Sequence record: ON529851.1
DNA length: 64,000 bases
Reading direction: 5' to 3' (one strand)
Below, one piece after another: positions 304-24,901 of the stretch (the stretch's first letter is position 1; each line of letters begins with the position of its first letter). Made by a program: the position numbers and the translations under genes. The notes below the pieces were generated by a model that was given only the letters and a program-made list of their open reading frames with translations, ran no database searches and was not told the DNA's origin.

Positions 304-411
304 TGGGGCCTCCCTTGAATGAGCCTCATGCCTAGCACCGATTCGTTAACAAGAGGTTAACGCCGTGCGGCGGTCGGGCGTTAACCTTAACGGGCGTTAG
401 GAAAGCCAGGG

Positions 412-822
412 TCACAGGCCCCGGCACGTTGGGCCGAACCCGGACTCGATCGACGCGGGGTCGGTCAGGGGCAGGGCGCAGCGCCCGCAGCGGCCCTCAT
501 GATAGACCTTGAGCGCGGGCGGGATGCGCCCGGCGGCGAGGTGGGGCCACGCCCACGCGAAGGCGCGCGCGGACGGGGCGTCGGCGCCGATGCTGGCGCG
601 GCGGCCATGCCGGAACGAATCATCGGCGAAGATCGTGCCGAGGAAGGTGTAGTCGGCTTCGTTGTCCGCGCCCGTCAGGACCGACACGAACCAGACGCTG
701 TCCTTGGCGCCCACGCGATAGGTGAAGCGGGCGCCGGTGGTCTCGCTGACCAGCGTGACGCGGGCGCGCCCGGCGAGCATGAAACGGCGGACGGTTTCGG
801 CGGACATTTCAGCGGCGGACAT
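412..822 (-). CDS. DUF6011-like Zn-ribbon protein
   Basis: C-terminal CGRCALPLTDPASIESGFGPTC matches the recalled DUF6011 pattern. Confidence 0.7.
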   Translation of the reverse strand: MSAAEMSAETVRRFMLAGRARVTLVSETTGARFTYRVGAKDSVWFVSVLTGADNEADYTFLGTIFADDSFRHGRRASIGADAPSARAFAWAWPHLAAGRIPPALKVYHEGRCGRCALPLTDPASIESGFGPTCRGL

Positions 823-964
823 GGGGTCGGCTCCGGGCGGGTGATCCTGTCACCCTAGAGCCGATTCGTTAACAAAAGGTTAAGCCCGCGCCGTCGCCGG
901 GACGCGTTAAGGTTAACCGGCGGCAGGCGGGAAAACGCCGCCCGGCGAACCGGGCGGCGCGGGA

Positions 965-1474
965 TCAGGGGGCCAGAGGATCGGGGGCGGGGATGATCTC
1001 GACTTGACGCCGGCCCTGCTTGACGCGCCCGACCTTGATTCGCTTCTCGACGGCGGCGCGCGCCCATTCGTTGCGCGTGGTCTCGGCGGCGTGGCGGCCC
1101 GTCTCATCAACGGCGCTGTAGATGGAATACAGCAGGCCGAACAACGCGACCTCCGGCATGGCCTTGACCGCCTCCAGCATTTCGCCGTTATCGTAGGCGC
1201 CTGACACTTCCACGACGCGCGTCCCCGCGCCGTGCTGCATCAGAATGTAGAAGGTCGATTTGCGGTCGCGGCGGCGCTCGCTTTCGCCGGTGCGGCGGAC
1301 GGCCAGCTTGACGTCATAGGCGCGGTAACAGACGCCCGTGCCGGGCTTGCCGTTGTCGCTTCCCAGGATTCGCATTTCGCGTTCCGGCAGGGGATGGCGC
1401 AGGACCTCGAAGGGCTCGAAAGTCGTGTCGTCGGCGTAGCCCGACCCACGGGCGATGATGGCGCTTTTCAGCAT
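965..1474 (-). CDS. Hypothetical early protein
   Basis: ORF track; GGAGA RBS, CtrA-type promoter, downstream terminator. Confidence 0.8.
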   Translation of the reverse strand: MLKSAIIARGSGYADDTTFEPFEVLRHPLPEREMRILGSDNGKPGTGVCYRAYDVKLAVRRTGESERRRDRKSTFYILMQHGAGTRVVEVSGAYDNGEMLEAVKAMPEVALFGLLYSIYSAVDETGRHAAETTRNEWARAAVEKRIKVGRVKQGRRQVEIIPAPDPLAP

Positions 1475-1528
1475 GAGGGGTCTCCGGTTGCGAGCCTGTA
1501 TCTCTACAGGCCCGGCGTTAACAGGGGC

Positions 1529-1966
1529 TTAATACGTGATGTCGTTCGTGCGGTCCCGCAGGGCCTCGGCGTAGGTGTCGAAGGGCGCCGATTCGGCCTC
1601 TTCTTCGGCGTCATACCAATGGAACTTCTCGACCGGGGCGGCGTCTTCCGTCGCGCCGGGGTAGGTGCGCAGGAAGACTTCCAAGTCTTCCAGATCGGCG
1701 TCGTCCGGGTCCATTTGCAGGGCGAGGGCCTTGGGCTGGGCCGGGACCGCGCCGCCCGAATAGACGTCCACGCACACGCCCATGAAGGTCGCGATTTCGG
1801 TCGCCTGCTTCAGGAACAGCCGCTGATTGTCGCGGGGCAGGGCTTGGGCCACGGCCACCGTATAGGCGTCGCTGGCGAGGCTCCAGACCAGTTCGGTGAA
1901 GGTCTCGACGCCGTCGTCCATATCGGCGTAACCGACGACGGTGTAAAAGGCGGGGGATTCGGCCAT
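1529..1966 (-). CDS. Acidic hypothetical early protein
   Basis: ORF track; RBS and promoter; D/E-rich. Confidence 0.8.
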   Translation of the reverse strand: MAESPAFYTVVGYADMDDGVETFTELVWSLASDAYTVAVAQALPRDNQRLFLKQATEIATFMGVCVDVYSGGAVPAQPKALALQMDPDDADLEDLEVFLRTYPGATEDAAPVEKFHWYDAEEEAESAPFDTYAEALRDRTNDITY

Positions 1967-2156
1967 GGGGCGCTCCTGTTTCGTTGGGGATACCCTAGAC
2001 CGCAGAAGTTAACAATAGGTTAAGACGATGCAGTTTTTCGGGCGGGCGCGCCGGGCGTTAACCTTAACAAGCCGTTAACCTTACCGGCGGGCGGGCAGGG
2101 GCGGCCCCGGCCTAGAGCCGGGGCGCCGGGGCGGCGTCGTTCCGCCCCGTTCCTTG

Positions 2157-2360
2157 TCAGTCTTCGTCCGGGCGGTAATCCGGGTCGGGATCGAAGCGAC
2201 CGCAGAAGGTGCGGCCCTCCGATTCCATGTCAGGCTGAAAATCCCGGATGACGTAGAGCGCCCGGCCCACGGTGTTGAGGTTGAGCACCGCGACCGGGGC
2301 GCCCTTCCGGTCGGCGGTGCGTTGCGCGTCGCGCTTGGCCTGATCGAGGGTCATGCTCAC
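2157..2360 (-). CDS. Hypothetical protein
   Basis: Start overlaps upstream stop; terminator at about 2104-2125. Confidence 0.75.
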   Translation of the reverse strand: MSMTLDQAKRDAQRTADRKGAPVAVLNLNTVGRALYVIRDFQPDMESEGRTFCGRFDPDPDYRPDED

Positions 2361-2725
2361 CCCTCGTAACGGTCGTGAACCGAAACCGGGCCGCCGAAGC
2401 GCGAGCCGCCGAGACGTTCCACGGCTTCGTTAAAGCGGCTGTCCGAGGTTCCGGCGTAGTTGCCGCCGAACATCAGCCAGCGCGTGTCCATCTCGCCGGT
2501 GTCCGTCGCCGGGACGATCTTGACCGCGCCGCGCACGTTGCCCTTGACCAGATAGGCGGCGGGGCGCGACGGGTTGGGGTCGAACGGGCCGTCGACGTTG
2601 ACCAGGGTCAGTTGCGCGACCTTGGACGACACGCCGCCGTTGGTGCAGTCCACCGAGTCCAGCTTCAAAATGTCGCCCGGTTGGTCGGCGGCGCAGCGGC
2701 GGTAGATGGAAACGATCAGGCCCAT
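2357..2725 (-). CDS. Phage hypothetical protein
   Basis: RBS, promoter; TNGGVSS / MFGGNY..TSDSRF motifs recalled from phage proteins. Confidence 0.8.
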   Translation of the reverse strand: MGLIVSIYRRCAADQPGDILKLDSVDCTNGGVSSKVAQLTLVNVDGPFDPNPSRPAAYLVKGNVRGAVKIVPATDTGEMDTRWLMFGGNYAGTSDSRFNEAVERLGGSRFGGPVSVHDRYEG

Positions 2726-2798
2726 GGGGCTCTCCTTTGTTTGACCTTCACACCATAGCGCGAAGGTCTTAACAAGAGGTTAACGCCGGAAAGATTTT

Positions 2799-2963
2799 TC
2801 AGGCGGCGGGAAACAGGGCAGCGGTCGAGACGCCGCCTAGCAGGGCGCGGCGGAACGGGTCGAGCGCGACCACGGCGGCGGCCTTCGTCTTGCGGGCGCG
2901 CGGCTTGGGGGCCTTCGCGGCGGCGGGCTTGCGGGCGCGGGGTGTCTTCGGGGCGTCGGTCAT
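2799..2963 (-). CDS. Small K/A/R-rich basic peptide (54 aa)
   Basis: ATG 2963 below degenerate box at 3020; MTDAPKTPRARKPAAAK... Confidence 0.5.
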   Translation of the reverse strand: MTDAPKTPRARKPAAAKAPKPRARKTKAAAVVALDPFRRALLGGVSTAALFPAA

Positions 2964-3123
2964 GGCAGGGCCTTTCAGCAGGGGTTGAAGTCCAGAGCCC
3001 GCAGCCTCGCATTGATTCCTTACCAAAGGATTAACGGGCCAGGCGCCGCCGCCGGGCGTTAACCTTAACGGATCGGGCGGGACCGTTAACCACGGCGGAG
3101 GGGGGTCCGCCGTGGTCGTGGGG

Positions 3124-3462
3124 TCAGTTCACCCCGGCGATGATCGACAGGTCGCCGTAGAACTTGCCCTTGAACGGGATGCAATCGCCTTGCGGCGAGA
3201 GTTGGTGTTCAATCCAGAACCGGTCGTCGCCCTCGACCTTGGAGCCGTGCACGTTGCTGTAGCCCTTGGCTTCCCACTCGGCCATGACCTCGGGGAAGGC
3301 GGCGCGGAAGGCCTCGCGCTCCATGGCGAACTTGAGTTCGCTCATGTAGGTGATCTGGATATAGCGGAAGGGGCCGATGGTCGGGCCTTCGAATCCCCAG
3401 TCCTCCATGTTCTGATCGGCGTCGTCGCGGCCATGGAACAGGCGCAGATGAACGTCGGACAT
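3124..3462 (-). CDS. Hypothetical early protein
   Basis: Start re-assigned to MSDVHL after GGAGA RBS. Confidence 0.8.
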   Translation of the reverse strand: MSDVHLRLFHGRDDADQNMEDWGFEGPTIGPFRYIQITYMSELKFAMEREAFRAAFPEVMAEWEAKGYSNVHGSKVEGDDRFWIEHQLSPQGDCIPFKGKFYGDLSIIAGVN

Positions 3463-3640
3463 TGGTCGTCTCCTCTTTCGATACAGACCACTATAGAGGC
3501 GATTCGTTAACAAGGAGTTAACGCCGGGACGATTTTTCGGGCGGCGCGGGCGGGCGTTAACCTTAACATCCTGTTAACCTTAACAACCGGTTTACAGGCC
3601 CGTTAACCATGGCGGGGGCGCCGCCATGGTCGGGGTCCGG

Positions 3641-3892
3641 TCAGGCCGCCGGGGGCGGCGGGATCGGGTGGCGCTCGGCGAGGCTCTTGGCGGTCCACGA
3701 GTCGGGGGTCGAGAGGTCATAGGACTCGGCGAACAGGCGGGCGCACTCCTGCACCGTCTCACCCTTCAGGTGGTCTTCATACCAGCTACGCAGTTGGTCT
3801 TCATCGGCGCCCGCGTCGCGGTAGTCGATGCCGTAGCCCGCCAGCAAGGCGGCGTTGGCGGCGGCGAGCCAGAGTTCAAACGTGGGATACAT
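3641..3892 (-). CDS. Hypothetical early protein
   Basis: ORF track; RBS and promoter. Confidence 0.8.
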   Translation of the reverse strand: MYPTFELWLAAANAALLAGYGIDYRDAGADEDQLRSWYEDHLKGETVQECARLFAESYDLSTPDSWTAKSLAERHPIPPPPAA

Positions 3893-4080
3893 CGGGCGTC
3901 TCTCCTTGTTCCGATGCTTAGATCATACCCGGCAGAAGTTAACAAGAGGTTAAGACCAGAAAGATTTTTCAGGGGCCGACCGGGGCGGCGTTAACCTTAA
4001 CAGACCTTAATCTTTTGTTAAGGTTAACGGGCGGGGCCAGGAAATGGTTAACGGCCGTTAACCACTCCCCTTAACCGTCC

Positions 4081-4365
4081 CTAGTTGGGACGGTCGTCGG
4101 TGAACTCGATTTTCTTTTCCGTGGCGGCGATCAGGGTCGTGACGTCGGCGATGGCGTCGTCCAGCTTGGCGGCGCCCTTGTAGGTCTTGCCGGTCCAGCC
4201 GCCGACCATCGCCAGCAGGTTCTTGGCGGTGTAGGCCCGGTTGACCTTCATGCCGATCTTGAGGGCGTGCAGGCCCCGCCGGACGGCGATCATCTGGTAG
4301 CGGGCGATGGCCTCGCCGGTGTGGGTGACGGCGCCGTGTTCGGAGATGTGGACTTGATCGGTCAT
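4081..4365 (-). CDS. Hypothetical early protein
   Basis: ORF track; RBS and promoter. Confidence 0.8.
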   Translation of the reverse strand: MTDQVHISEHGAVTHTGEAIARYQMIAVRRGLHALKIGMKVNRAYTAKNLLAMVGGWTGKTYKGAAKLDDAIADVTTLIAATEKKIEFTDDRPN

Positions 4366-4562
4366 GTCTGTGTTCCCTTGTTGGTGAGATCACTATAGCG
4401 GCCTAGTTCTTAACAACAAGTTAAAATCGAAATAAATCGTGCCTAACGGAAAGGGTTAATTTTTCGGGGCCGGGCGTTAACCTTAACAAGAGGTTAACGG
4501 CTGTTAAGGTTAACGCCAGCGGGTCAGGCGAGACCGCCCCGGCGAACCGGGGCGGCGGGGGG

Positions 4563-4808
4563 TCAGCCGATCTGAAACAGGATGCGCGACAGCTTCTCGC
4601 GCTGCCGGCGCCCGCCGACCGGGGCGAGCACTTTACGCACCCGCAGGGTCCAGCCGCGATCCGGCATGACCACGGCGGGGTGATCGTTCCACATCGCCCC
4701 GGCGCGGCGCTCGACGGCGGCCAGCGTCCCGGTCAGGGTTTCGGTGCGTTCGCCGGGCTCGCCGTGGCGGTTGGCGATGGTCAGGCGGTAGGTGGCGAGA
4801 TCGGTCAT
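4563..4808 (-). CDS. Hypothetical early protein
   Basis: ORF track; promoter 4853, terminator about 4535-4560. Confidence 0.8.
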   Translation of the reverse strand: MTDLATYRLTIANRHGEPGERTETLTGTLAAVERRAGAMWNDHPAVVMPDRGWTLRVRKVLAPVGGRRQREKLSRILFQIG

Positions 4809-4903
4809 GGGCGGCTCCCGGTGGTTGATCCCGCCACACTACAGGCGAGGTCTTAACAAGGGGTTAACAGCAGGGGCGCCCCGGCGAACCGGGGCGGCGG
4901 GGG

Positions 4904-5527
4904 TCAGCCCAGATGAATGGCGCCGTCGTCGCCGGTGTAGAGATAGACCTCTTCGGGGTATTTTTGCGCGGCTTCCGTCAGGGCCTCGCCCTCCGCTTCG
5001 GGCCAGTCGCCGTCTTCCCAATACCCGACGCCGCTGCGGGTCCGGGTCATGTAGAAGTCATAACCGGCTTGCTCCTGCACCGAACAATTGACCGCGCGGA
5101 CCTCGCCCGACGCATAGGCCGCTTCCAAGGTGGCGGCGTTCTCGCGTTGGAAGCGTTCGCAATCCGCGACCATTTCGCGCAAGCCGTCCGGGTGAATCTC
5201 TTCCGGGCAAATCGTGTTGTCGCGGTCGTGGTCCGCGTTGGGGTGTCCGGTCGGATACTCGGCGCCGTTGGAGGCGGCGGCGGCGATGTAGCCGCGCGTG
5301 AACGAATCGCACGGCGTCAGGATCGACCAGGACTCGGCCTCATAGGCGGCGCGCGCCTCGGCGTTGGCCTCTTCGAGGGCGTCCACAACGGCGCGGGCTT
5401 CCGCGACCAGAGCGGCGGGTTCCGTGTGTGGGTATTGCATCACCGTCAGGGCGGCGATCTGCTTCGCCGTCAGGGGGCTATATTCGGGGACCGTGGTTTC
5501 GGCGGTCAGCTTGGCGAGGGTCGTCAT
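4904..5527 (-). CDS. Phage hypothetical protein (AGxDF.MTR..xGxG.W type)
   Basis: Start MTTLAKL after RBS; QAGYDFYMTRTRSGVGYW motif. Confidence 0.8.
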   Translation of the reverse strand: MTTLAKLTAETTVPEYSPLTAKQIAALTVMQYPHTEPAALVAEARAVVDALEEANAEARAAYEAESWSILTPCDSFTRGYIAAAASNGAEYPTGHPNADHDRDNTICPEEIHPDGLREMVADCERFQRENAATLEAAYASGEVRAVNCSVQEQAGYDFYMTRTRSGVGYWEDGDWPEAEGEALTEAAQKYPEEVYLYTGDDGAIHLG

Positions 5528-5896
5528 GGGGTTGCTCCCGTTGATGTGTGAGCATATTGCACGGCAAGGTCTTAACAACAAGTTAACGCCACGCAGATTT
5601 TTCAGCGGGCGGGCGGGCGTTAAGGTTAATGCGAAAGGCTCGCAAGGGGCGGCGTTAACCTTAACAGAATCGCCCGAAAAATTAACCACGCCCGTTGACG
5701 CTTTCTTAACGACTCGGCGCTAGGCTCAAGGGTTCCATAGCCACGCCTCGCGCCGGGTCCGACCCCCCGCGCGCGGTGGTCCGCGCTCGCCTCATCCGGG
5801 GCGGGGCGCCCGGCCACGCGCCCCGACATCAGGAGGCGCGAGCCCGCCCGGCTGGGCGGTCGATCGGTCATGCCGGCGGCCGCCAGGGCGGGGGTG

Positions 5897-6056
5897 CGTC
5901 GAATCGAAACGGCGTCAGGTCAAGTCGGCCGGCGTCAAATCGAAATGGCGTCAAGTCAAGTTTGATCGTGTCAAATCGAAATGGCGTCAAGTCAAGTTCG
6001 CCCGCGTCAAATCGAAACGGCGTCAGGTCAAGTTCGCCCGCGTCAAGTTTGATCCG
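5897..6056. repeat. 4 x 36-bp tandem repeat, two CGTCAA-type motifs per unit
   Basis: Units at 5897, 5933, 5969, 6005 (cgtcaaatcgaaayggcgtcargtcaagt...) plus partial at 6041. Confidence 0.95.
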
Positions 6057-6080
6057 CCAGGACCTGAGCGAAAACGAAGA

Positions 6081-6109
6081 CGCCCGGCGCGCATGAAAGC
6101 GGCCGGGCG
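6081..6109 (-). terminator. Intrinsic terminator
   Basis: CGCCCGGC...GCCGGGCG stem below the 22-aa peptide ORF. Confidence 0.6.
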
Positions 6110-6124
6110 TCAGGGGTCATCCGT

Positions 6125-6193
6125 TCAGAAACAGAGACCCACAATCATGAGGGCGAAAACGATCTTGGACGCGGAACAGAGTTTATCGAGCAT
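6125..6193 (-). CDS. 22-aa hydrophobic peptide MLDKLCSASKIVFALMIVGLCF
   Basis: AGAAGGAAG upstream, terminator downstream, paralog at 23546-23614. Confidence 0.65.
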   Translation of the reverse strand: MLDKLCSASKIVFALMIVGLCF

Positions 6194-6217
6194 ATTCAGG
6201 GGCTTCCTTCTACTAAG

Positions 6218-6361
6218 GAGTCACGCCCGGTAGTAAACGTGACAGGTCGTGGGAACGCTACAGGGAGAAAACTCGCGAGTCATCGTTCGGGGCTAACGTG
6301 ACTGAACTATTTGTTAATCCGGGGCCGGGTCTGGAGTCACGCTGGGTGGGAAACGTGACTC
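6218..6361. repeat. Three 28-bp dyads AGTCACG-N12-CGTGAC
   Basis: Dyads start at 6218, 6277, 6334. Confidence 0.9.
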
Positions 6362-6374
6362 CGGGGTTTCGGTT

Positions 6375-7358
6375 TCAGGCCTCGGCTTGGCGGACGACCG
6401 TGGCGGCGGTCGTGCGGCTGGCGAACTGCTCGCTCGCGATGTCCCCCTTCAGCCCCTCAAAGGCCATGATGCTCGCCCTCAGGTCCGGGGTGATGTAGTC
6501 GGTCCCCTCAGCGGTCGCGTCCGCCTGAAACAGGTCCAGCAGGCGCGCCCGCACCCCGGCGGCGTCGTCCGCATAGAGGATCGGCGCGCCCTCCTGCTCG
6601 GGCTCGATCCGATACGGGCGCCGCTCGCACTCGATCTCGAACGGCCCTTGCCAGTTGCGGACCTCGACCGGCGCCAGGGCGGCGTCGGACAGTTCGTCAA
6701 AGACGCCGTTCTCACGGTCGCCGCATTCCTCGACCTCGGCCTGAGACACGAAGAACTCATGGCGGGCGTCGTCCGCCGCGATAGCGTGGTCCATGATCCA
6801 CGCCTGACCTTGGAAGGTCGCGCGATAGGGCAGGGTTTCGGGCGCCGGCAGGGCGGACGCCGGGGGGTCGCGGTCCATCCAGAAGCGGTAGAGGGCCGCC
6901 CAGGCGCGCGCCCGCTGGCGGTCGCCGGTCGCGGGCAGATAGGCGTCGTGCAGGGCCTCGGCGGCGGCGGCCCGGTCCGGGCCGTCCGGATCGGCCTGAT
7001 CCGCCTCATGGGCGTCGAAGGTCAGCAGGACGGCTTGCGTATGGCGGGCGGTCCATTCACCGGCCGGACCCGCCGCCAGAACCTCGCGCACCTCGGGGAG
7101 GGTCAGGTGGGAAAACTGGGCAGGGTCCCCGGCGATCAATTCCGCAGGGTCCCCGGCCTTGGATTCGGCAGGGTCCCCGGTGATGAATTGGGCAGGGTCC
7201 CCGGCGATGGATTCGGCAGGGTCCCCCCGCTCGATTCCGTCCGCGATGACATAGAGCCGACCGATGAGGCCTTGGGCGGCTTCCGGCGTGGGGTTGTGGC
7301 GCAGCGCCAGCACTTGGGCGGCGGCGGCGCGGATCAGGGCGGGATAGGTGGTGCTCAT
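6375..7358 (-). CDS. Hypothetical protein with 5 x GDPA 8-aa repeat
   Basis: ORF track; GGAG RBS; repeat encoded by a 24-bp GGGTCCC array. Confidence 0.8.
   Translation of the reverse strand: MSTTYPALIRAAAAQVLALRHNPTPEAAQGLIGRLYVIADGIERGDPAESIAGDPAQFITGDPAESKAGDPAELIAGDPAQFSHLTLPEVREVLAAGPAGEWTARHTQAVLLTFDAHEADQADPDGPDRAAAAEALHDAYLPATGDRQRARAWAALYRFWMDRDPPASALPAPETLPYRATFQGQAWIMDHAIAADDARHEFFVSQAEVEECGDRENGVFDELSDAALAPVEVRNWQGPFEIECERRPYRIEPEQEGAPILYADDAAGVRARLLDLFQADATAEGTDYITPDLRASIMAFEGLKGDIASEQFASRTTAATVVRQAEA
7123..7225. repeat. 5 x GGGTCCC at 24-bp period inside a CDS
   Basis: 7123, 7147, 7171, 7195, 7219. Confidence 0.95.
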
Positions 7359-7530: not shown

Positions 7531-7550
7531 CCTGACGGGGAGACAGTCCG

Positions 7551-17429: not shown

Positions 17430-17912
17430 TTAATCGGCGGCGGGAATTCTGAGGTCCACGCCGAAGACGTGAACCAGTTCGCCGGTCGGCTTGCGCACGA
17501 TCACGCCCAGCCACTGCTCCTCGACAAAATAGCCCGTCACCTCGGCGTCGCCGATGCGATTGACGGCGACGCGCACGGTCGCGCCGACCGGGGGCGGGGA
17601 GTCCTCGCCGGACCACAGGACGGAACCGGCGAGGCCCGGCGGCAGCAGTCGGCCGTCCTTCCAGCGCGCCAGTTCATAGGCGGGGACGTGGGGGCGCCAC
17701 AGGGGGGCGTAGACCTCCATCAGCCACGTCGGGCCGTAGGTGTTGCGGATCGCGCGCAGCAGTCCGCCGTCCGCTTCCTGGGTGTCGCCGCCGGTCGCCC
17801 ACAGGAGGGTCAGATGCTCTTTCCAACCGCCTTCGACCTTGGCGTATTTGTCGGCGAAGTTCAGCAGGGCGGCGGACGCCTCGGGCGTCAGGGCGGGGTA
17901 GGTGTCAGGCAT
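17430..17912 (-). CDS. Hypothetical early protein
   Basis: RBS and promoter. Confidence 0.8.
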   Translation of the reverse strand: MPDTYPALTPEASAALLNFADKYAKVEGGWKEHLTLLWATGGDTQEADGGLLRAIRNTYGPTWLMEVYAPLWRPHVPAYELARWKDGRLLPPGLAGSVLWSGEDSPPPVGATVRVAVNRIGDAEVTGYFVEEQWLGVIVRKPTGELVHVFGVDLRIPAAD

Positions 17913-18068
17913 GGGGCGTCTCCCTTGTTCGATGATCCCTTATAGCCACAATGTCTTAACAAAAGGTTAATTCCATGACAAGGGCGTGCGGGCGTTAACC
18001 TTAATGTGGCGTTAAGGTTAACGCGACCGGGTCGCAAGAAAGGTCCCCGGCCGAAGCCGGGGACGGGG

Positions 18069-18533
18069 TCAGGCGGCGTCCTTGTATTCGGGGAATTTGG
18101 CGATCAGGGCGGCGACCGTCTCCTCGACCGACTTCATGTTGGGGAAGTAGTGGTCGGCCGGATCGGCGAAGTCCAAGGCGAAGTCGCAGATGAAGGGGAT
18201 CGCGTCCCACTGCCAGCAGCGGCAGCATTCGAACCAGTCGCGCCCGTCCTGATTGAAGGCGATCCACACCGCCTCGAAATAGGGGCCAAGGCGCATCATC
18301 ACGTCGCGCATCTCGGCGGAGCCGTAGCCGTCCAAGGCGTCGTCCCAGCGCGCGTAGGCGGCCCGCCGCTCCTTGTCCTTGGCGCGCTGGTTGCGCGAAT
18401 CGACGGACAGGGCGACATACTCCCACGCCGCCATGGACGCGTGGATCGCGGCAGACGGATAGCTGGCGCGCATCTTGCGATACTTCTTGGCCGTGGGCGT
18501 GGGCTTGAACGTGGTGCGGTGCTTGTAGGGCAT
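18069..18533 (-). CDS. Hypothetical early protein
   Basis: Start MPYKHR after GGAGGAGA RBS. Confidence 0.8.
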   Translation of the reverse strand: MPYKHRTTFKPTPTAKKYRKMRASYPSAAIHASMAAWEYVALSVDSRNQRAKDKERRAAYARWDDALDGYGSAEMRDVMMRLGPYFEAVWIAFNQDGRDWFECCRCWQWDAIPFICDFALDFADPADHYFPNMKSVEETVAALIAKFPEYKDAA

Positions 18534-18688
18534 GGGCGTCTCCTCCCGGTTGATCCTGAGACCATAGACCCTAGAAGTTAACAAGAGGTTAACGCCGTGA
18601 ACGTCATGCGCCGTTAAGGTTAACGCCCGCGTGCGGGGAAAGCCGCGCCGCCGGGGGAGACAACCCGGCGGCGCGGCAGGCGGCGACC

Positions 18689-19246
18689 TCAGACGTTGTA
18701 GTCGCCGTATTCCGTCCCGCACTGGACGATTTCGCCGGTGGCGTCGTCCCAGTGGATGCGGTTCAGGCGCAGGATGCCGCCCCTGACGTGGGTCCATTCC
18801 ACCTGACAGGTGATCATGTCGTCGAAGATCGCCTTGGGCTCGCCGTATTGCGACCAGTCGATGCCGCCGCGCTGATCGACCTCGCCCTTGGCGTCGGACA
18901 GGATGCGGGCCAGCACGTCGGGCATGAGGCGACCCGGCGCCCTCTTGGTCCCATAGGAGCCGCGCCCGCCGTTCGTCATGTTGCTGAACTTCGTGAGGTC
19001 CTGCACATAGTTCTCGACCTCGACCGTCCCCGGCTGGGGCAGGTCATACATCAGGTCCGACAGAATGTCGCCGACCGGATAGGACTCCGTGGCGGCGTCC
19101 AGCCTGTCGGCCAGTTCGGCCCCCTCGTCGCCCGGCTGGACGTAGAGTTCGGCGCCGTCGGCGCGGCGCGCCAGGACGCCGCCCATCGAATCACGCCAGG
19201 CCTTGAACCCGCCGTCGTCGCTCTCCCAGGTCGGCGCCTTGCTCAT
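18689..19246 (-). CDS. Hypothetical protein
   Basis: Coupled to upstream gene; terminator follows. Confidence 0.8.
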   Translation of the reverse strand: MSKAPTWESDDGGFKAWRDSMGGVLARRADGAELYVQPGDEGAELADRLDAATESYPVGDILSDLMYDLPQPGTVEVENYVQDLTKFSNMTNGGRGSYGTKRAPGRLMPDVLARILSDAKGEVDQRGGIDWSQYGEPKAIFDDMITCQVEWTHVRGGILRLNRIHWDDATGEIVQCGTEYGDYNV

Positions 19247-19659
19247 GCCTCGACCTCCTCTTCGACTTCGGCATAGGCGCTGGGGATGCGCTTGTTCGTG
19301 TGATCGCAGAACAGATCGGGGTCCTCATAGTTGATCTGGACGCTGTCGAGGCGCCAGCCGGTCGAGGCGTCGTGCAGGTGGTCGTCACAGACCAGCGTGA
19401 AGTTCGCCTGCACCGCGTCGAACGACAGGGCGACGCCGTCGCGGGTGGCGAAATAGAGCGGATAGCCGCCGAGGTCCGTGTAAGGCCCGGCGCGCAGCGC
19501 GGCCTTGACCTGCTGAAGCGCCTTGACCGGATCGGCGTCGAAGCGGGCGGCCGATCCCTTATAGGCGGCGCGCAGCGGCTTGGCGGTTCCCCAGCCGGGC
19601 TGGCGGGTGTCGTAGAGGGCGCCATCGGACGAGGCGAAAAGGTGGGCGGGCAATGTCAT
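19243..19659 (-). CDS. Phage hypothetical protein (GGYPLYF...INYED..L.CDH)
   Basis: RBS, promoter, recalled phage motif. Confidence 0.8.
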   Translation of the reverse strand: MTLPAHLFASSDGALYDTRQPGWGTAKPLRAAYKGSAARFDADPVKALQQVKAALRAGPYTDLGGYPLYFATRDGVALSFDAVQANFTLVCDDHLHDASTGWRLDSVQINYEDPDLFCDHTNKRIPSAYAEVEEEVEA

Positions 19660-19828
19660 GGGGTCTCCTCCCGTTGCTGACCCTCCCTGTATCGCATGAA
19701 GTTCTTAACAACAAGTTAACGCCGCGTTTTATTTCCGGCGGCGGACGGCGGGCGTTAACCTTAACGCGCTGTTAAGGTTAATGCGAGCGGGTCGCGGAAG
19801 GGGCGCCCGGCCGAAGCCGGGCGCCGGT

Positions 19829-19969
19829 TCAGGCGGCGGTGCGGTAGCGGGTGTGGCCCCGGTCCCAGGTGTAGGCCTCGACCGATCCGCTCGGGTGGGG
19901 GTTGTTCCACCACTTGACGCCCCGGCGCGCGGCGGCGTAGCCCGCGCCTTCGATCTGGGCGGCGTCCAT
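19829..19969 (-). CDS. Rmf-like 46-aa protein
   Basis: MDAAQIEGAGYAAARRGVKWWNNPHPSGSVEAYTWDRGHTRYRTAA resembles the Rmf G.Y.A...G...(N/C)PY......W..G pattern. Confidence 0.5.
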   Translation of the reverse strand: MDAAQIEGAGYAAARRGVKWWNNPHPSGSVEAYTWDRGHTRYRTAA

Positions 19970-20214
19970 CAGGCGCCGATCCGGTGGGCCGGGCAGAAGC
20001 CCGACACGACCTTGACGCGACCACGCTTGAAACCGGGGCGCAGGGCGCGCGCCGAGCGTTCGGCGTCGGCGGTCTTCATGTGACCGCAGGCGCAGGACGC
20101 GCCGGGGTCGCGGGTCTGGGCCTCGCGCACCTTGTCGGCGCCGGCCTGTGTGCCGAGCCAGCCGCAGAAGGGCTCGCCGCCGACCGTGATGTGAGCGGGT
20201 TGGGTGTTAATCAT
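19969..20214 (-). CDS. Hypothetical protein
   Basis: Coupled ORF. Confidence 0.7.
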   Translation of the reverse strand: MINTQPAHITVGGEPFCGWLGTQAGADKVREAQTRDPGASCACGHMKTADAERSARALRPGFKRGRVKVVSGFCPAHRIGA

Positions 20215-20743
20215 CGTCGCCGTCCTCCTCGTCCTGGGGCATATCCTCGGCGTCGGTCAGGCCGGTGACGGTCCACCAGCCGAGGCCTTGAGCGTCACCC
20301 GACGTGTAGCCTTCGCGGACCATCGTCGCCATCGCTTCCAGCGCGTCGGCCACGTCCTCGTCGGTCATGGCGTCGTGACCGTTGAAGGTGAAGGTCGGCT
20401 TGACCGTCACCGGGGCGGGGGTCGATTCGCTGTTGATCTCTTCATGATGCGTCACGCTCTCGGCGACGATCTCAGCGAGGTCGTCGCCGACCAGCATCCA
20501 GTCTTCGGCGTCGCCGTCCGGGTCATAGACGACGAAGGCGCCGGGGTATTGCGCGACGCGGGCGCGCCAGCCGTTGCGCACCTCGGCGTGTTTCTCGCCG
20601 ATCCAGTCGGCGCCCATATGGGTTGCGCCCTCGTAGGCTCTGACCGGGAAATTGGTCGTCATCAGTTCGCTGCGGGTGGCGACGCGCAGGCCCCACACGT
20701 CGAGGGCGGTCTGGGCTTGCGTCAGGGTCATGGCGTCGGGCAT
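20207..20743 (-). CDS. Hypothetical protein
   Basis: Start MPDAMTL after AAGGAGG. Confidence 0.8.
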   Translation of the reverse strand: MPDAMTLTQAQTALDVWGLRVATRSELMTTNFPVRAYEGATHMGADWIGEKHAEVRNGWRARVAQYPGAFVVYDPDGDAEDWMLVGDDLAEIVAESVTHHEEINSESTPAPVTVKPTFTFNGHDAMTDEDVADALEAMATMVREGYTSGDAQGLGWWTVTGLTDAEDMPQDEEDGDDD

Positions 20744-20753
20744 CGGGGCCTCC

Positions 20754-20951
20754 TTAGAGATGGATCGCGGCGTCGAACGCCTGGGATTGCAGTTTCTTGG
20801 CGGCTTCGGCCTCGGCGGGGTAGAGCCGGGCCAGGCCGTCAAAGCGTTCTTTCTGATGCGAGCGCTCGCCCTCGGCGGCGGTCATGTGCATGACCTCGCC
20901 CCACAGGTGGGCCATTTCGAGGATCAGGACAGAGCGGCGGGAAGCGTTCAT
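20754..20951 (-). CDS. Hypothetical protein
   Basis: RBS and promoter. Confidence 0.75.
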   Translation of the reverse strand: MNASRRSVLILEMAHLWGEVMHMTAAEGERSHQKERFDGLARLYPAEAEAAKKLQSQAFDAAIHL

Positions 20952-21003
20952 GGCGGTCTCCTTGTTGACCTCGCCACCCTAGCAGCGAGGTCTTAACAAG
21001 AGG

Positions 21004-21249
21004 TTAACAGCGGCGGAGCATTTCACGCATCAGGGCTTCCTCGTTGCGGGCGATGTCCAGCGCGGCGCGGTCGTGGCCTTGCTCATGCGCCTGCTTGGCC
21101 TGCTGTCGGCAGATGTCCTGGCGCTTGCGGATGTCAGCCTCCGACAGGGTGCGGAACAGGGCGTCGGCCTCCTGATCGACCTTGACGGTCCAGTGCTGCT
21201 GCGATTCGTCGTCGGCGCGGAGATGGGCGGGGAAGTAGGCGTCGGCCAT
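21004..21249 (-). CDS. Hypothetical coiled-coil protein
   Basis: AGGAGG RBS. Confidence 0.75.
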   Translation of the reverse strand: MADAYFPAHLRADDESQQHWTVKVDQEADALFRTLSEADIRKRQDICRQQAKQAHEQGHDRAALDIARNEEALMREMLRRC

Positions 21250-21257
21250 GGGTCCTC

Positions 21258-21569
21258 CTAAAGGTTCTGGTCGCGGACGCGGGCGAGCGCGGTGTGGACG
21301 GCGGGGAGCAGGGTCGGCGTCTGGCCGCTCATCCAGAACTCGGTCGCGTCGCCCTCGCCCATCTGATGCGAGACGCCGTAGAAGCAGGCGCCGCGCGGGG
21401 TGTCGTCATTGGGGCATTGGACCCAGACCGGCAGGTCTTGGCCGTCGCGGGTGAGGACCAGCGCGTCATCCGTGCTGCCGTCGTCGGCGACCTCATAGCG
21501 GGCCGACAGGCCGGCAGCGGTCAGCAGGGTCATGGCGGCGGTCCAGGGGGCGCCTTGGGGAAGGGGCAT
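21258..21569 (-). CDS. Hypothetical protein
   Basis: RBS and promoter. Confidence 0.75.
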   Translation of the reverse strand: MPLPQGAPWTAAMTLLTAAGLSARYEVADDGSTDDALVLTRDGQDLPVWVQCPNDDTPRGACFYGVSHQMGEGDATEFWMSGQTPTLLPAVHTALARVRDQNL

Positions 21570-21704
21570 TGCGATCTCCTTTGTGCTGACCCTGTTCTAG
21601 CAATGATTCGTTAACAAGAGGTTAACGTCCTGCGCGGTGGTCCGGGGCGTTAACCTTAACAGGGTCAGGCCGGAAAACGCCCCGGCCGAAGCCGGGGCGC
21701 AGGG

Positions 21705-22595
21705 TCAGCCGACCCGCTCCTTCTTGAGGTGGTAGGACCGACCGTGGGTCATCAGGGAGCGGAACCCGCCCAACCGGGTCTCGCCCGGCGCCGGGGTCAC
21801 GACATAGACCGGATCGAGGAAGTCGTCGTTCCAGCGGATCACGTCGTCGAACGCCTGCGGCGTGTGCAGCACGACCTTATAGGGTTCGCCTTCGGGCGCG
21901 ACCAGATCGGTGGTGTGGTCCTCGTCGCCCTTGTAGCCGAACACCGACAGGACCGCGACCGGCAAGCCGTCGTCGAGCGTCGAGAGGTCTTGCAGGGCGC
22001 GGGCCTCGGCCAGCCGCTTGTGCGGCTCATAGAGGGCGCAGTCGCGCTTGAGCAGGTCAGCGCGCAAGGCGACGACACGCTGGGGCGTCAGGTCCAGAGA
22101 CGCGCAGGCCCCGATGACGACGCCGTAGATGAAGCCGAGTTCGTGCTGCGTGAGCGACACCATGCCGTCCATTCCCGCCGTCGCGACCTCCTGATTTTTC
22201 AGGCCGAACGCCGCCAGGGCGCCGGCGACGTCGCGGCACTCCTGCCGGGTCGGGGCGGTCTTGGCCTCGATGTGGAGGCGCAGGGTGTCGCGGGCCTTCA
22301 TCAGGTCCACAATCGCCAGCGACAGGCCGGTGTAGCGTCCATCTTCGACCGGGGCGGGCTTGGGCTTCGGGGCCGGGTAGGTCTCGACGCACAGCAGGCG
22401 GGCGCGGGTCTCCTCGACCGTATAGACCTCGACCTGATAGGCCATGCCGAGCGCCACGCGCAGTTCGTTGCGGATCGCCAGACCGGCCTCGGGGTCGGTG
22501 GTGGTCAGGCGCAGTTCGCCGATCCGGCGGTCCTCGCCCTGGGCGGGATGGCGGCGCGACAGTTCGAGGCGCAGGTCGTAGGGGGCGTCGGTCAT
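21705..22595 (-). CDS. Hypothetical early protein
   Basis: RBS, promoter, terminator. Confidence 0.8.
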   Translation of the reverse strand: MTDAPYDLRLELSRRHPAQGEDRRIGELRLTTTDPEAGLAIRNELRVALGMAYQVEVYTVEETRARLLCVETYPAPKPKPAPVEDGRYTGLSLAIVDLMKARDTLRLHIEAKTAPTRQECRDVAGALAAFGLKNQEVATAGMDGMVSLTQHELGFIYGVVIGACASLDLTPQRVVALRADLLKRDCALYEPHKRLAEARALQDLSTLDDGLPVAVLSVFGYKGDEDHTTDLVAPEGEPYKVVLHTPQAFDDVIRWNDDFLDPVYVVTPAPGETRLGGFRSLMTHGRSYHLKKERVG

Positions 22596-22648
22596 CAGGG
22601 TCTCCCGTGGTTGAGCGTCCGGTATAGCCGGAAGGTCTTAACAAACCG

Positions 22649-23020
22649 TTAACGGCGGTCTTCGCTGAGGCGGGCGAGTATTTCGTCGTTCGTCATCGTG
22701 TCCAGCAGGTCTTGCACCTGACGGGCCTTTTCGTCCTCGACCGCCTGAGCCGCCGCCTTGGCGCGGCGATGCTCGGCCAGCGCCGCCTTGCCCGCTTCGG
22801 TCGTCTCCGGGTCGATGGTCATGTAAAGGCTGACCTCGCGGCCCTGCCGATCCACGAAGGTCAGGCTTCCAGACGGACGCACCTTGACGGTGAACATCGC
22901 CTTGACCAGCCGCTCGGCGGTCTCTTGACCGAAGTCGCCGCCGAAGCTGCCGCCCGCCGCCTTGAGGGTGTTGTCGCTCTTGAGGCGGGTGTGATAGCCG
23001 ATGTTCTTGTAGGTGTGCAT
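22649..23020 (-). CDS. Hypothetical protein
   Basis: Start MHTYKNIG after AAGGAG. Confidence 0.8.
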   Translation of the reverse strand: MHTYKNIGYHTRLKSDNTLKAAGGSFGGDFGQETAERLVKAMFTVKVRPSGSLTFVDRQGREVSLYMTIDPETTEAGKAALAEHRRAKAAAQAVEDEKARQVQDLLDTMTNDEILARLSEDRR

Positions 23021-23030
23021 GGGGCGCTCC

Positions 23031-23369
23031 TTAGAAGGGAATGTCGTCGTCGAACGCGGGCGTCGTGACATAGGTCTGGGCGGGGCGGGCGCGGCGGGCG
23101 GCGTCCATCTCGGCGCGCTCCTCGTCCGTCGCGCTCCAATACTCGTCGTCTTCCGGGTGCGCGCCGGGCTCGCCGCGATAGTGCGGGTTCTTCACCCAAG
23201 CGTCGAACGGGTGCAGCAGCCACTCCACGTCAGGCGCCTCGAAGCCTTCCGACTGAGCGAACCCCGACAGGGCCAGGCTCATGTATTCGCCCTGGCTCAG
23301 CGACTCCATCGCCAGAGCGTCTTCCTTTTCGCGGCGGGCCTCTTCGGCCATTTCGATCACATCGCGCAT
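23031..23369 (-). CDS. Small acidic protein ending in SSB-like tail DDDIPF
   Basis: C-terminus PAFDDDIPF; W..NPHY.G.PG.HPE motif; no OB fold evident. Confidence 0.8.
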   Translation of the reverse strand: MRDVIEMAEEARREKEDALAMESLSQGEYMSLALSGFAQSEGFEAPDVEWLLHPFDAWVKNPHYRGEPGAHPEDDEYWSATDEERAEMDAARRARPAQTYVTTPAFDDDIPF

Positions 23370-23545
23370 CGGCGTCTCTCCTTGTGAGCCCCCTTTATGC
23401 CAGACAGAAGTTAACAACAAGTTAACGCCGACGCTTTTCTGCATTTTTCTTCAGGCGGCGGCTGCGGGCGTTAACCTTAACAGCCTGTTAAGGTTAACGG
23501 GCGGGCGGGGCCTGGGAAACGGCGTCCCGTAACGGGACGCCTCTC

Positions 23546-23614
23546 CTAGAAGGTGAGCATGATGACCAGCAGGGCCAGAAAGAGGCGGGAGGCGCCGGCC
23601 AGCTTGTCGATCAA
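23546..23614 (-). CDS. 22-aa hydrophobic peptide MIDKLAGASRLFLALLVIMLTF
   Basis: TTG overlaps upstream TGA; paralog of 6125-6193; hairpin follows. Confidence 0.6.
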   Translation of the reverse strand: MIDKLAGASRLFLALLVIMLTF

Positions 23615-24081
23615 GACTCGCTGTCCGCTTTCATCGCCGCGCACAGGGTTTCGACCAGCCGCTTGTGACGCGCCAGAGCGGCGGGGTCGGCGCGCTCGCC
23701 TTGGAAGGGGACCAGCACCAGAGGTGTGGCCGAGGGGTCCAGCGCCCAGAAGATTTCCGTCTCGCCGTCCGTCATCTGGTAGGTATAGACGTTCAGGTCG
23801 GCGGGGGCGTGGTCGAGGAAATAGACGCGCCCGTTGAACTTGACGTCGAAGGGCTGATCCGGCGTCGCCAAGTCGATCTCGGCCAGCACGGCGTCGCGCA
23901 CGGCGTCAATCGGGTGAACGCCGTCTTCGCCGATTTCATCAGGACGGGATTCGGCCTCGGCCTCCGCGTCGCGCTTGATGTCCTCGACCACGGCGGCGCG
24001 CGCCTCCTCCCAAGTCGCACAGGCGCTGGGCTCCTCGTCGGGCATGAAGCCCGAGACATTCGATCCGGTCACATAAGGCAT
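23611..24081 (-). CDS. Acidic hypothetical protein
   Basis: Start MPYVTGS after AAGGAGA. Confidence 0.8.
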   Translation of the reverse strand: MPYVTGSNVSGFMPDEEPSACATWEEARAAVVEDIKRDAEAEAESRPDEIGEDGVHPIDAVRDAVLAEIDLATPDQPFDVKFNGRVYFLDHAPADLNVYTYQMTDGETEIFWALDPSATPLVLVPFQGERADPAALARHKRLVETLCAAMKADSES

Positions 24082-24233
24082 CGGGGTCTCCTTGTTGGTT
24101 CCGATGGTGCAGACTACCCGACAAGGTCTTAACAAAAAGTTAACAGCGGCGCAATCGCTTTTCTTCGCGACGTTAACCTCTTGTTAACTTCCGTGTGGGA
24201 TAAGGGACAGGTCAACAACACAGGAGATCGCCG

Positions 24234-24479
24234 ATGGGCGAAGTCATCCCGCACCGCGTCTGGCGCAACACCCGGACCGAACGCACCGCTGGCGTGTTCG
24301 GCGCCGTGCCTTGGGTCTCGGACGCGGAGAAGTCCGACTGGGAACTGGTCACGGTCGGCTGGACCGTTCGCCACCCGGACGGCACGACCGGGGTCGGTCG
24401 CTTCGCCTTCGAGACGAAGGACGAGGCGCAGGCTTGGGTCGATGAGAATCCCAACTTCCCCGGCATGAGCCAAGGCTAG
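24234..24479 (+). CDS. Hypothetical protein, only + strand gene of the early zone
   Basis: AGGAGA RBS, inverted CtrA box 24173-24187, terminator about 24485-24515. Confidence 0.8.
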   Translation: MGEVIPHRVWRNTRTERTAGVFGAVPWVSDAEKSDWELVTVGWTVRHPDGTTGVGRFAFETKDEAQAWVDENPNFPGMSQG

Positions 24480-24533
24480 TCACAAGGGCGTCGGTCGCAA
24501 GGCCGGCGCCCTTCGCCGCTGCGACCGGCTCGC

Positions 24534-24893
24534 GTTAACCTTAACAGGGCGTTAACCTTAACAACCCTGCCCGCTCTAGGGGTATGACCGGGTAGGGCCA
24601 GGTATGACCGGGTCATACCGGGGCGGATTCCCGCTGAAAATCACCCAAATTCGCCGAATTTCGCCCAAAATCGCCGGATTTTGACCTTAAATCACTGTTT
24701 TTACTCGATTTTTCAGGTTTTCAGGCGGTTCAGCGGCCGTTAACCTTAACAGGGCGTTAACCTTAACGCTGGAATGGTTAACGGGGCGTTAACCTTAACG
24801 CGGGGATGGTTAACGCGGTGTTAACCTTAACGCCCGGATGGTTAACGGGCCGTTTACCTTAACGCCGGGAGGGTTAACGCCCCCAGGGTTAAT
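24534..24893. promoter_or_regulatory. Dense gene-less cluster of TTAA boxes; GGTATGACC-G-GGTCATACC palindrome at 24601-24619
   Basis: Chained GTTAACCTTAAC and TTAA-N7-TTAA units. Confidence 0.75.
24631..24727. repeat. Phased A/T-tract segment, inverted relative of 25802-25893
   Basis: A/T tracts about every 10 bp; reverse complement aligns by eye with 25802-25893. Confidence 0.7.
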
Positions 24894-24901
24894 CCGGGGC
24901 G

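What the first reader, a model, noticed from the sequence alone, without database searches (positions are those of the whole stretch)
372..24560. Integron-like cassette architecture built from repeated promoter and terminator modules
Seen: most units read (minus strand) GTTAAGGTTAAC, CtrA box, -10, GGAGAC RBS, 1-4 genes, GC hairpin terminator, next GTTAAGGTTAAC. The TTAA-N2-TTAA motif recurs roughly 25-30 times by eye, usually just past a terminator. Established: repeated promoter/stem-loop cassettes mediate modular shuffling in T4-type phages. Inference: these short homologies let single genes be gained, lost or reordered without an integrase, and the N2 motif may be a separate binding or insulator site.
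Basis: partly seen in the sequence, partly recalled or inferred. Interest (0 to 1): 0.65.

Follow-up and report, generated by a model that had tools for sequence, protein, structure and literature searches.

The report
Phage early-gene cassette array with boundary motif
This is the early-gene region of a giant Brevundimonas phage: dozens of tiny genes, each with a copy of one promoter built on the host cell-cycle regulator's binding site. The layout is already published for this phage group, but a conserved 12-base motif just after each terminator seems undescribed.

Summary
The window is Brevundimonas phage vB_BpoS-Marchewka (phiCbK-like, 348 kb), record 62001-126000.

- **Motif counts.** TTAA-N2-TTAA occurs 38 times in the window (0.04 expected), always with CC or GG in the middle. 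TTAA-N7-TTAA (CtrA box) occurs 47 times (0.06 expected). In the whole genome both are confined to about 37 kb between the terminase and portal genes, the place of the terminal repeat in phiCbK and CcrSC.
- **Known part.** CtrA-site clustering in these repeats was published in 2022, and this scan has already seen it in CcrBL9, CcrRogue and CcrSwift.
- **New detail.** The 12-mer GTTAA-SS-TTAAC sits a median 18 nt after the terminator stem. It is 99-100% conserved between relatives while its flanks drift. The same geometry holds in Gurke and Caulobacter phage CcrSC, which use ordinary TTGACA promoters. It is no commoner than a reversed control in 81 host-order genomes.
- **Shuffling.** Ten of 16 clean gene-size indels have junctions inside repeated module parts, with 10-141 bp of flanking homology. 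This resembles the PeSL cassettes of T4-type phages. Gaps carrying the motif break no more often than other gaps, and nothing looks integron-like.
- **Open.** What binds the 12-mer, and what it does, is inferred only.

The parts
1..24561 (-). Early-gene cassette array. The window holds its terminase-proximal two thirds; it continues to about record 49.7 kb, left of the window. About 45 small genes lie here, all but one on the minus strand.
   Evidence: Annotation of ON529851.1. Only 2 of 45 proteins match Pfam (both domains of unknown function) and 9 of 45 match a PHROG. No paralogues were found.
380..24562 (.). Thirty copies of the 12-bp element GTTAA-SS-TTAAC (TTAA-N2-TTAA), in either orientation, single or in pairs 17, 27 or 35 bp apart. 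Core starts: 381, 907, 2058, 3059, 3557, 3574, 3991, 4018, 4477, 4504, 5620, 5655, 7465, 8959, 9840, 10750, 11964, 12836, 14330, 15084, 17995, 18012, 18614, 19755, 19772, 21650, 23471, 23488, 24535, 24552.
   Evidence: 38 hits against 0.04 expected; core 99-100% conserved in 172 orthologous comparisons, flanks 76-89%; median 18 nt after the terminator stem.
346..24143 (-). Thirty-two proximal CtrA-box promoters in the window: TTAA-N7-TTAA 56-70 nt before the ATG, in place of a -35. Class A (20) follows a terminator and the 12-mer. Class B (12) is embedded in the end of the upstream gene.
   Evidence: Consensus: GTTAAC, 5 nt, GTTAAC, then a -10 like GCTAGAAC (class A) or CCTGTAGGGT (class B).
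9893..10800 (-). One typical unit: hairpin 10777-10800, T tail, 12-mer 10749-10760, CtrA box 10712-10726, gene 9893-10666. The whole unit is absent from Papperlapapp and Kabachok.
   Evidence: The deletion is bounded by a 141-bp shared promoter stretch.
18024..18608 (-). Cassette (gene 18069-18533) present here and absent in Kabachok and Domovoi. Its junctions fall at the 12-mers at 18011-18022 and 18613-18624.
   Evidence: 19-bp overlap that contains the 12-mer.
4576..4877 (-). Cassette (gene 4563-4808) present only in Marchewka. It is bounded by a 41-bp repeat of the terminator hairpin.
24234..24479 (+). The only plus-strand gene of the array (81 aa), with its own CtrA-box promoter at 24173-24187. 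Its terminator is followed by a pair of 12-mers (24534-24562), and no promoter follows them in that direction.
   Evidence: Homologues occur in Gurke and in the CcrSC repeat (gp031c) but not in phiCbK or Colossus.
24563..26650 (.). Non-coding leader between terL and the first cassette. It holds a 32-bp repeat (x4) of the 12-mer plus GTTAACCAT at 24746-24879, a 16-bp TTGACG repeat (x13) at 24891-25106, CGTGACT dyads at 25340-25760, a 25-bp GGGACCC repeat (x8) at 26082-26292, and three more 12-mers at 26335-26418.
26651..29374 (-). Terminase large subunit gene. Its 3' part matches the first 750-780 bases of the linear CcrSC and phiCbK records, where their terminal repeats begin.
   Evidence: Gill 2012 (PMC3556154).

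Best explanation
This is the pre-early, terminal-repeat-type gene array of a phiCbK-like jumbo phage. About 75 small genes of unknown function lie between terL and the portal gene. They are probably the first genes expressed and probably serve host takeover.

Promoters. Forty-seven genes carry a copy of one host-type promoter in which the -35 is replaced by a CtrA box. Host RNA polymerase would therefore fire them in cells rich in active CtrA, the swarmer-type cells these phages infect (inferred from published work on relatives).

The 12-mer. GTTAA-SS-TTAAC is a distinct, selected DNA element made of two CtrA-type TTAAC half-sites 6 bp apart. It forms a unit with the terminator, 16-20 nt after the stem. 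I take it for a protein-binding boundary element. The bound protein is most plausibly host CtrA using the half-sites, or else an unidentified phage protein. It would sit where polymerase pausing on the weak T tract meets it. That would reinforce termination, insulate the next unit, and could also tune the next promoter. This step is inference.

Shuffling. Because terminator, 12-mer and promoter recur about 30-47 times, they give 10-141 bp of homology. General recombination between them deletes, inserts and moves single genes, as PeSLs do in T4-type phages.
For: Identity and place.

Motifs confined to the region between terL and portal: 46 of 47 12-mers and 70 of 71 CtrA boxes.

Homologous region: the 23.9-kb CcrSC terminal repeat holds 38 TTAA-SS-TTAA motifs per copy and only 3 elsewhere.

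Published CtrA binding and regulation at such phage promoters: PMC9437464.

The 12-mer is selected:
- It gives a sharp conservation footprint.
- The stem-to-motif gap is the same in Marchewka (18 nt), Gurke (17) and CcrSC (19), although the last two use TTGACA promoters.
- It is phased at 11 or 21 bp with further TTAA half-sites.
- It follows the terminator of the lone plus-strand gene, where no co-oriented promoter follows.
- Class B promoters lack it.

Recombination: 10 of 16 clean indels show flanking homology inside modules, and gene order is rearranged against Gurke and CcrSC.
Against: - No binding, termination or expression data exist for this phage.
- A 6-bp half-site spacing is not a known CtrA dimer geometry.
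- The 12-mer is no commoner than a reversed control in 81 host-order genomes. If CtrA binds it, the host itself does not use that arrangement.
- Nineteen phage genes share the motif's distribution (Gurke and CcrSC yes, phiCbK and Colossus no). None shows a DNA-binding family among those scanned.
- Gene turnover is as frequent at gaps without the 12-mer or terminator. Survival of only non-disruptive indels explains part of the pattern.
Confidence: 0.6

Rival explanations
1. The 12-mer is simply an extra upstream CtrA site that activates or represses the next promoter. Its closeness to the terminator is a by-product of short intergenic gaps.
For: It is built of TTAAC half-sites. Pairs 17 bp apart create a canonical TTAA-N7-TTAA between them, and phasing at 11 and 21 bp is sharp. 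In Gurke and CcrSC its distance to the -35 clusters at 24 and 42-44 nt. Multi-site CtrA promoters are known in the host group (title and abstract of PMC11264516).
Against: In Marchewka the distance to the CtrA box is loose (19-51 nt for most) while the distance to the stem is tight. Twenty CtrA-box promoters work without it. It follows the plus-strand gene's terminator where no promoter follows. It is no commoner than a reversed control in host-order genomes.
Confidence: 0.2
2. A phage-encoded protein, not CtrA, binds the 12-mer. One example would be an early or middle protein that shuts off or insulates the pre-early units.
For: The motif is phage-specific. It is no commoner than a reversed control in 81 host-order genomes. 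It is present in Marchewka-type phages, Gurke and CcrSC, but phiCbK has 4 copies and Colossus none. It works in either orientation and is nearly palindromic, as for a symmetric dimer. Nineteen genes share this distribution.
Against: No candidate shows a recognisable DNA-binding domain. The central CC/GG is asymmetric yet conserved. Tight phasing with CtrA half-sites is unexplained by an unrelated binder.
Confidence: 0.25
3. The modules play no mechanistic part in gene turnover. Indel ends lie in them only because intergenic DNA here is almost all module, and indels that damage genes are lost.
For: Adjacency loss is similar for gaps with the 12-mer (32%), promoter-only gaps (32%) and gaps with neither (21%). 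Six of 16 clean events show no junction homology.
Against: Eight of 16 events have 19-141 bp of flanking direct repeat, far beyond chance, and the genome lacking the insert carries one hybrid copy. Unique genes share near-identical 45-140 bp regulatory stretches.
Confidence: 0.2
4. An integron-like, site-specific system. Inverted pairs of the 12-mer (11-bp arms, 7-bp spacer) would be core sites for the phage tyrosine recombinase, which excises and inserts cassettes.
For: Inverted pairs have the geometry of tyrosine-recombinase core sites. A 232-aa Phage_integrase-domain gene exists at record 257882-258493.
Against: The recombinase is a core gene also in phiCbK and Colossus, which have almost no such motifs or none, and it lies about 170 kb away. 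Junctions fall in hairpins, promoters or single 12-mers with variable homology, never at a fixed spacer. Each cassette has its own promoter.
Confidence: 0.04

Closest known systems
CtrA-site-rich terminal repeats of phiCbK-like phages (Mascolo et al. 2022, PMC9437464; termini in Gill et al. 2012, PMC3556154)
   Same: Same phage subfamily (Dolichocephalovirinae) and same place next to terL. Small genes of unknown function, CtrA boxes concentrated in promoters and almost nowhere else in the genome. Ten CcrSC repeat proteins have homologues here.
   Different: I could not tell whether this phage was in that study. The array here is larger (about 37 kb) and has 47 near-identical CtrA-box promoters. 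The separate 12-mer and its coupling to terminators are not described there (no hit for GTTAAC, TTAACC or terminator in that text), nor in any searchable paper.
PeSL cassettes (promoter-early stem-loops) of T4-type phages (Arbiol et al. 2010, PMC2839356; PMC4122927)
   Same: Repeated composite promoter-plus-terminator modules in a gene-variable region. Indels between close relatives end in the modules. The genes are single and of unknown function.
   Different: Unrelated phage family and unrelated sequences. The order is terminator, 12-mer, promoter. The promoter depends on a host regulator's box. Mini-circles are untested. Many indels here do not use the modules.
Integron cassette arrays
   Same: A one-directional row of small single-gene units that differ between relatives.
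   Different: No adjacent IntI, no attI or attC, every unit has its own promoter and terminator, and junctions are homology-based.
Terminator-plus-bound-protein boundary elements (Reb1/TTF-I sites after RNA polymerase I terminators and before the next rDNA promoter; bacterial repressor roadblocks). From my own knowledge, not checked here.
   Same: A short protein site at a fixed small distance downstream of a T-rich release element and upstream of the next promoter.
   Different: Analogy only. No binder is known here and no termination data exist.

Membership tests
CtrA-wired terminal-repeat region of phiCbK-like phages | The phage belongs to the phiCbK-like group and infects Caulobacterales. 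| tested here: met
   ON529851.1, Dolichocephalovirinae, host Brevundimonas pondensis.
CtrA-wired terminal-repeat region of phiCbK-like phages | TTAA-N7-TTAA sites are strongly concentrated in one genome region. | tested here: met
   70 of 71 genome-wide sites lie in record 40-100 kb. The window has 47 against 0.06 expected.
CtrA-wired terminal-repeat region of phiCbK-like phages | The sites lie in promoter regions of genes. | tested here: met
   47 boxes lie 56-70 nt before start codons, each followed by a host-type -10.
CtrA-wired terminal-repeat region of phiCbK-like phages | The region is a physical direct terminal repeat that starts in or just after terL. | not testable with these tools
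   The position next to terL and homology to the annotated CcrSC repeat fit. Read depth could not be obtained.
CtrA-wired terminal-repeat region of phiCbK-like phages | CtrA binds the sites and regulates the genes. | not testable with these tools
   Shown by gel shift and reporters for phiCbK, Delta and Cp1R7A-A1 only (PMC9437464).
PeSL-type shuffling cassettes | A repeated composite promoter-plus-stem-loop terminator module in a gene-variable region. | tested here: met
PeSL-type shuffling cassettes | Indels between close relatives are bounded by the modules, with recombination between copies. | tested here: inconclusive
   10 of 16 clean events show 10-141 bp of flanking module homology, but gaps without modules break about as often.
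PeSL-type shuffling cassettes | Excised mini-circles joined at the module. | not testable with these tools
   This needs PCR or reads.
Integron | An integron integrase gene next to the array, with an attI site. | tested here: not met
   The only tyrosine recombinase lies about 170 kb away and is a core gene of relatives that have almost no such motifs or none. No resolvase was found.
Integron | Promoterless cassettes, each ending in an attC site. | tested here: not met
   Cassettes have their own promoters and terminators. Junctions are not at a fixed site.
Canonical CtrA-binding site (for the 12-mer itself) | Two TTAA half-sites one helical turn apart (TTAA-N7-TTAA). | tested here: not met
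   The spacing is N2, a 6-bp period. A canonical site arises only between paired 12-mers 17 bp apart, or with a neighbouring GTTAACCAT.

The most novel reading that the evidence does not exclude
The 12-mer is a terminator-coupled roadblock and insulator. A protein bound 16-20 nt after each weak intrinsic terminator, possibly host CtrA held on two half-sites 6 bp apart, stalls RNA polymerase on the T tract. That would make each early cassette an independent unit gated by the host cell cycle. It would be a bacterial-virus counterpart of the Reb1/TTF-I boundary elements of eukaryotic rDNA, conserved across phages of two host genera and used with two different promoter types.
Probability: 0.25. 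Interest if true: 0.7.

Novelty: new variant of a known kind. Interest (0 to 1): 0.4.

Why it matters
The big picture is already known: phiCbK-like phages wire their terminal-repeat genes to the host cell-cycle regulator CtrA. What this window adds is a clean natural data set.
- It has 47 copies of one CtrA-box promoter.
- About 30 terminators are each followed at a fixed distance by a strongly conserved 12-mer.
- Sister phages of the same host strain use ordinary promoters but keep the 12-mer.

If the 12-mer proves to be a protein-bound boundary element, that would be a new way for a phage to insulate tightly packed genes, and a compact part for synthetic gene circuits in Caulobacter-type hosts. 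The indel junctions also extend promoter-terminator-mediated gene shuffling from T4-type phages to an unrelated phage group.

Tried and rejected
- **Terminator scanner.** The built-in scanner found no excess, because its T-tail rule is too strict for this GC-rich phage. I used my own hairpin search instead.
- **Phage-encoded CtrA.** No Trans_reg_C domain exists in the genome.
- **Integron or site-specific model.** Rejected.
- **Paralogue duplication as the source of the cassettes.** No paralogues were found.
- **Search for a binder.**
  - Nineteen genes share the motif's distribution across five phages. Ten of these, outside the array, gave only a nucleoside deoxyribosyltransferase match.
  - The 45 proteins of the window's array, which include five of the 19, gave only two domains of unknown function.
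  - Three candidates (714 aa, 62 aa and the 1055-aa repeat protein) and MARCHEWKA_01130 were not scanned.
  - The 81-aa plus-strand gene gave nothing in the protein atlas.
- **First tblastn profiling run.** It timed out and was redone with blastp.
- **Host use of the 12-mer.** It is no commoner than a reversed control in 81 genomes of the order of a Caulobacterales MAG.
- **Celeribacter persicus tangent.** Tandem TTAAGGTTAA pairs there gave no coherent downstream gene set.
- **XRE-regulator paper.** PMC10688885 gives its motif only in a figure, so it could not be compared.


Full report
**Identity and setting.**
- The first 24.6 kb of the window match Brevundimonas phage vB_BpoS-Marchewka (ON529851.1, 348,421 bp, Dolichocephalovirinae, host B. 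pondensis LVF1). The window is record 62001-126000.
- All genes in the flagged stretch but one are on the minus strand.
- The stretch lies between the large terminase gene (window 26651-29374) and, left of the window, a peptidase gene and the portal gene.
- In phiCbK the long direct terminal repeat starts inside terL and runs about 10 kb downstream (PMC3556154).
- In Caulobacter phage CcrSC the annotated repeat is 23.9 kb with 46 small genes.
- The 3' part of Marchewka terL matches the first 750-780 bases of both linear records, and ten CcrSC repeat proteins have homologues in this array.
- The array is therefore the positional and partly sequence homologue of those repeats. Whether it is physically repeated here could not be tested.

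- TTAA-N2-TTAA has 38 hits against 0.04 expected, all with CC or GG. TTAA-N7-TTAA has 47 against 0.06.
- Genome-wide, 46 of 47 exact 12-mers and 70 of 71 CtrA boxes lie in this one region, which extends about 11 kb beyond the window's start.
- Forty-seven of its 75 genes have a CtrA box 56-70 nt before the start codon, followed by a -10 that fits the Caulobacter type (GCTAGAAC; the type is from my own knowledge) and a GGAG ribosome site.
- There are two promoter classes. Twenty-seven follow a hairpin terminator and the 12-mer. Twenty are embedded in the end of the upstream gene and have neither.
- The proteins are almost all unknown: 2 of 45 match Pfam and 9 of 45 match a PHROG. No paralogues were found.

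**What is already known.**
- Mascolo et al. 2022 (PMC9437464) showed that predicted CtrA sites cluster in the terminal repeats of phiCbK-like phages, CcrSC included. They sit in promoters, bind CtrA in gel shifts and respond to CtrA in reporters. The authors proposed 'lytic deferment'.
- Earlier reports of this scan found the same kind of array in CcrBL9, CcrRogue and CcrSwift.
- The CtrA-box cassette array here is thus a new member of a known kind.

**The 12-mer is a distinct element.**
- Selection: in 172 orthologous comparisons with Bambus, Papperlapapp, Kabachok and Domovoi, its ten core positions are 99-100% identical, the central CC/GG included. Flanks fall to 76-89%.
- Link to the terminator: the gap from stem end to motif has a median of 18 nt (IQR 16-20). 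The gap to the CtrA box ranges over 19-51 nt for most units.
- Class B promoters lack it. The terminator of the lone plus-strand gene (24234-24479) is followed by a pair of 12-mers with no co-oriented promoter beyond.
- Other phages: Gurke (same host strain) has 64 copies and CcrSC has 79 (38 per repeat copy). The stem-to-motif gap is 17 and 19 nt there. Their early promoters are ordinary TTGACA types, not CtrA boxes. phiCbK has 4 copies and Colossus none.
- Phasing: distances between TTAA tetramers peak sharply at 6, 11, 17, 21, 23 and 27 bp in all three phages. The 12-mer is therefore phased by one or two helical turns with other CtrA-type half-sites. Pairs 17 bp apart create a canonical CtrA box between them, which is probably what a CtrA matrix scores in CcrSC. 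That last point is my inference.
- Host genomes: in 81 genomes of the order of a Caulobacterales MAG it occurs about 0.3 times per genome, no more than a reversed control.
- Phage-encoded CtrA: Marchewka has no CtrA-like gene.
- Literature: no searchable paper holds the 12-mer in this context.

**What the 12-mer does is inference.** The geometry fits a DNA-bound protein that meets RNA polymerase as it sits on the short T tract. That would strengthen termination and insulate the next unit, and could also act on the next promoter. Host CtrA is the most economical binder: the element is made of its half-sites and is phased with them, and CtrA is abundant in the infected cell type. Against this, a 6-bp spacing is not its known dimer geometry, and the host genomes sampled show no excess of the arrangement over a reversed control. 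A phage protein is the main alternative. Nineteen genes share the motif's distribution (present in Gurke and CcrSC, absent from phiCbK and Colossus). None of those scanned has a recognisable DNA-binding domain.

**Shuffling.**
- A collinear BLAST chain against four close relatives gives 16 clean gene-size presence/absence events in the array.
- In 10 of them, one stretch of the genome lacking the insert aligns to both flanks. The overlap is 10-141 bp, and at least 19 bp in eight.
- The repeated stretch is a terminator hairpin (4576-4877; an insertion in Kabachok), the 12-mer with its neighbours (18024-18608; 19766-19800; record 58339-58725), or the promoter (333-399; 9885-10656; 16147-16785).
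- Against Gurke, 39 of 75 proteins are shared with several one-gene translocations. Against the CcrSC repeat, the order of ten shared genes is scrambled while orientation is kept.
- This is the pattern described for PeSL cassettes in T4-type phages (PMC2839356).

**Limits on the shuffling claim.**
- Six events show no module homology, for example 20226-20741 inside an operon.
- Adjacency loss is no higher at gaps with the 12-mer (32%) than at promoter-only gaps (32%), and only slightly lower at gaps with neither (21%).
- The next 11 kb outside the array has a similar indel density.
- The modules help, but they are neither required nor special breakpoints. Selection against gene-damaging events explains part of the pattern.

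**Integron reading.** It fails. Cassettes have their own promoters and terminators, and junctions are homology-based and variable. The only tyrosine recombinase (record 257882-258493) is a core gene also in phiCbK and Colossus.

**Verdict.** The feature is real and striking and mostly of a known kind. The terminator-coupled, cross-genus conserved 12-mer and the junction evidence are the new parts, and they rest on sequence analysis alone.

Noticed in passing
window 24563-26650: The non-coding leader between terL and the first cassette is packed with separate repeat arrays: a 16-bp TTGACG unit x13, a 25-bp GGGACCC unit x8, CGTGACT dyads, and a 32-bp unit x4 that joins the 12-mer to GTTAACCAT. 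It may be a control, packaging or replication hub.
   Followed up: partly
window class A promoters, e.g. 10700-10712, 9792-9804, 11908-11920: About ten promoters carry GAATC (a GANTC site, the target of the host CcrM methylase) directly after the CtrA box. Others have CTTCTG or GACCT there, so methylation or GcrA may split the promoters into sub-classes.
   Followed up: no
L007 (Gurke) compared with window 1-24561: Two phages of the same host strain keep the terminator and 12-mer but differ in promoter type. Gurke has TTGACAC with an AT-rich upstream stretch, and Marchewka has a CtrA box in place of the -35.
   Followed up: partly
ON529851.1 257882-258493 (outside the window); L131-L135: A short (about 230 aa) tyrosine-recombinase-domain gene is conserved in Marchewka, Papperlapapp, Gurke, CcrSC, phiCbK and Colossus. 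Its role in these lytic phages is unknown.
   Followed up: partly
L207-L216 (Celeribacter persicus), L217-L220 (Jannaschia pagri): These Rhodobacterales genomes hold 31 and 23 TTAA-SS-TTAA motifs (reversed controls 10 and 9), nearly all CC or GG. In Celeribacter most are tandem pairs, TTAAGGTTAA, 5 nt, TTAAGGTTAA, in gene-upstream-looking DNA. Alphaproteobacteria are also over-represented among hits to the 14-mer. The meaning is unknown.
   Followed up: partly
window 5528-6374: An 847-bp gap without an annotated gene lies inside the array. Relatives show tandem-repeat length variation at 5896-6046.
   Followed up: no
window 32629-32640: The only 12-mer outside the array and leader lies in a run of overlapping small genes, with no terminator or promoter context.
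   Followed up: no
L229-L240 (IMG/VR): The inverted pair of 12-mers occurs in five metagenomic viral contigs (25-163 kb), besides two 317-kb and 322-kb contigs; the 317,489-bp one matches CcrSC in length. Uncultured relatives therefore carry the element.
   Followed up: no
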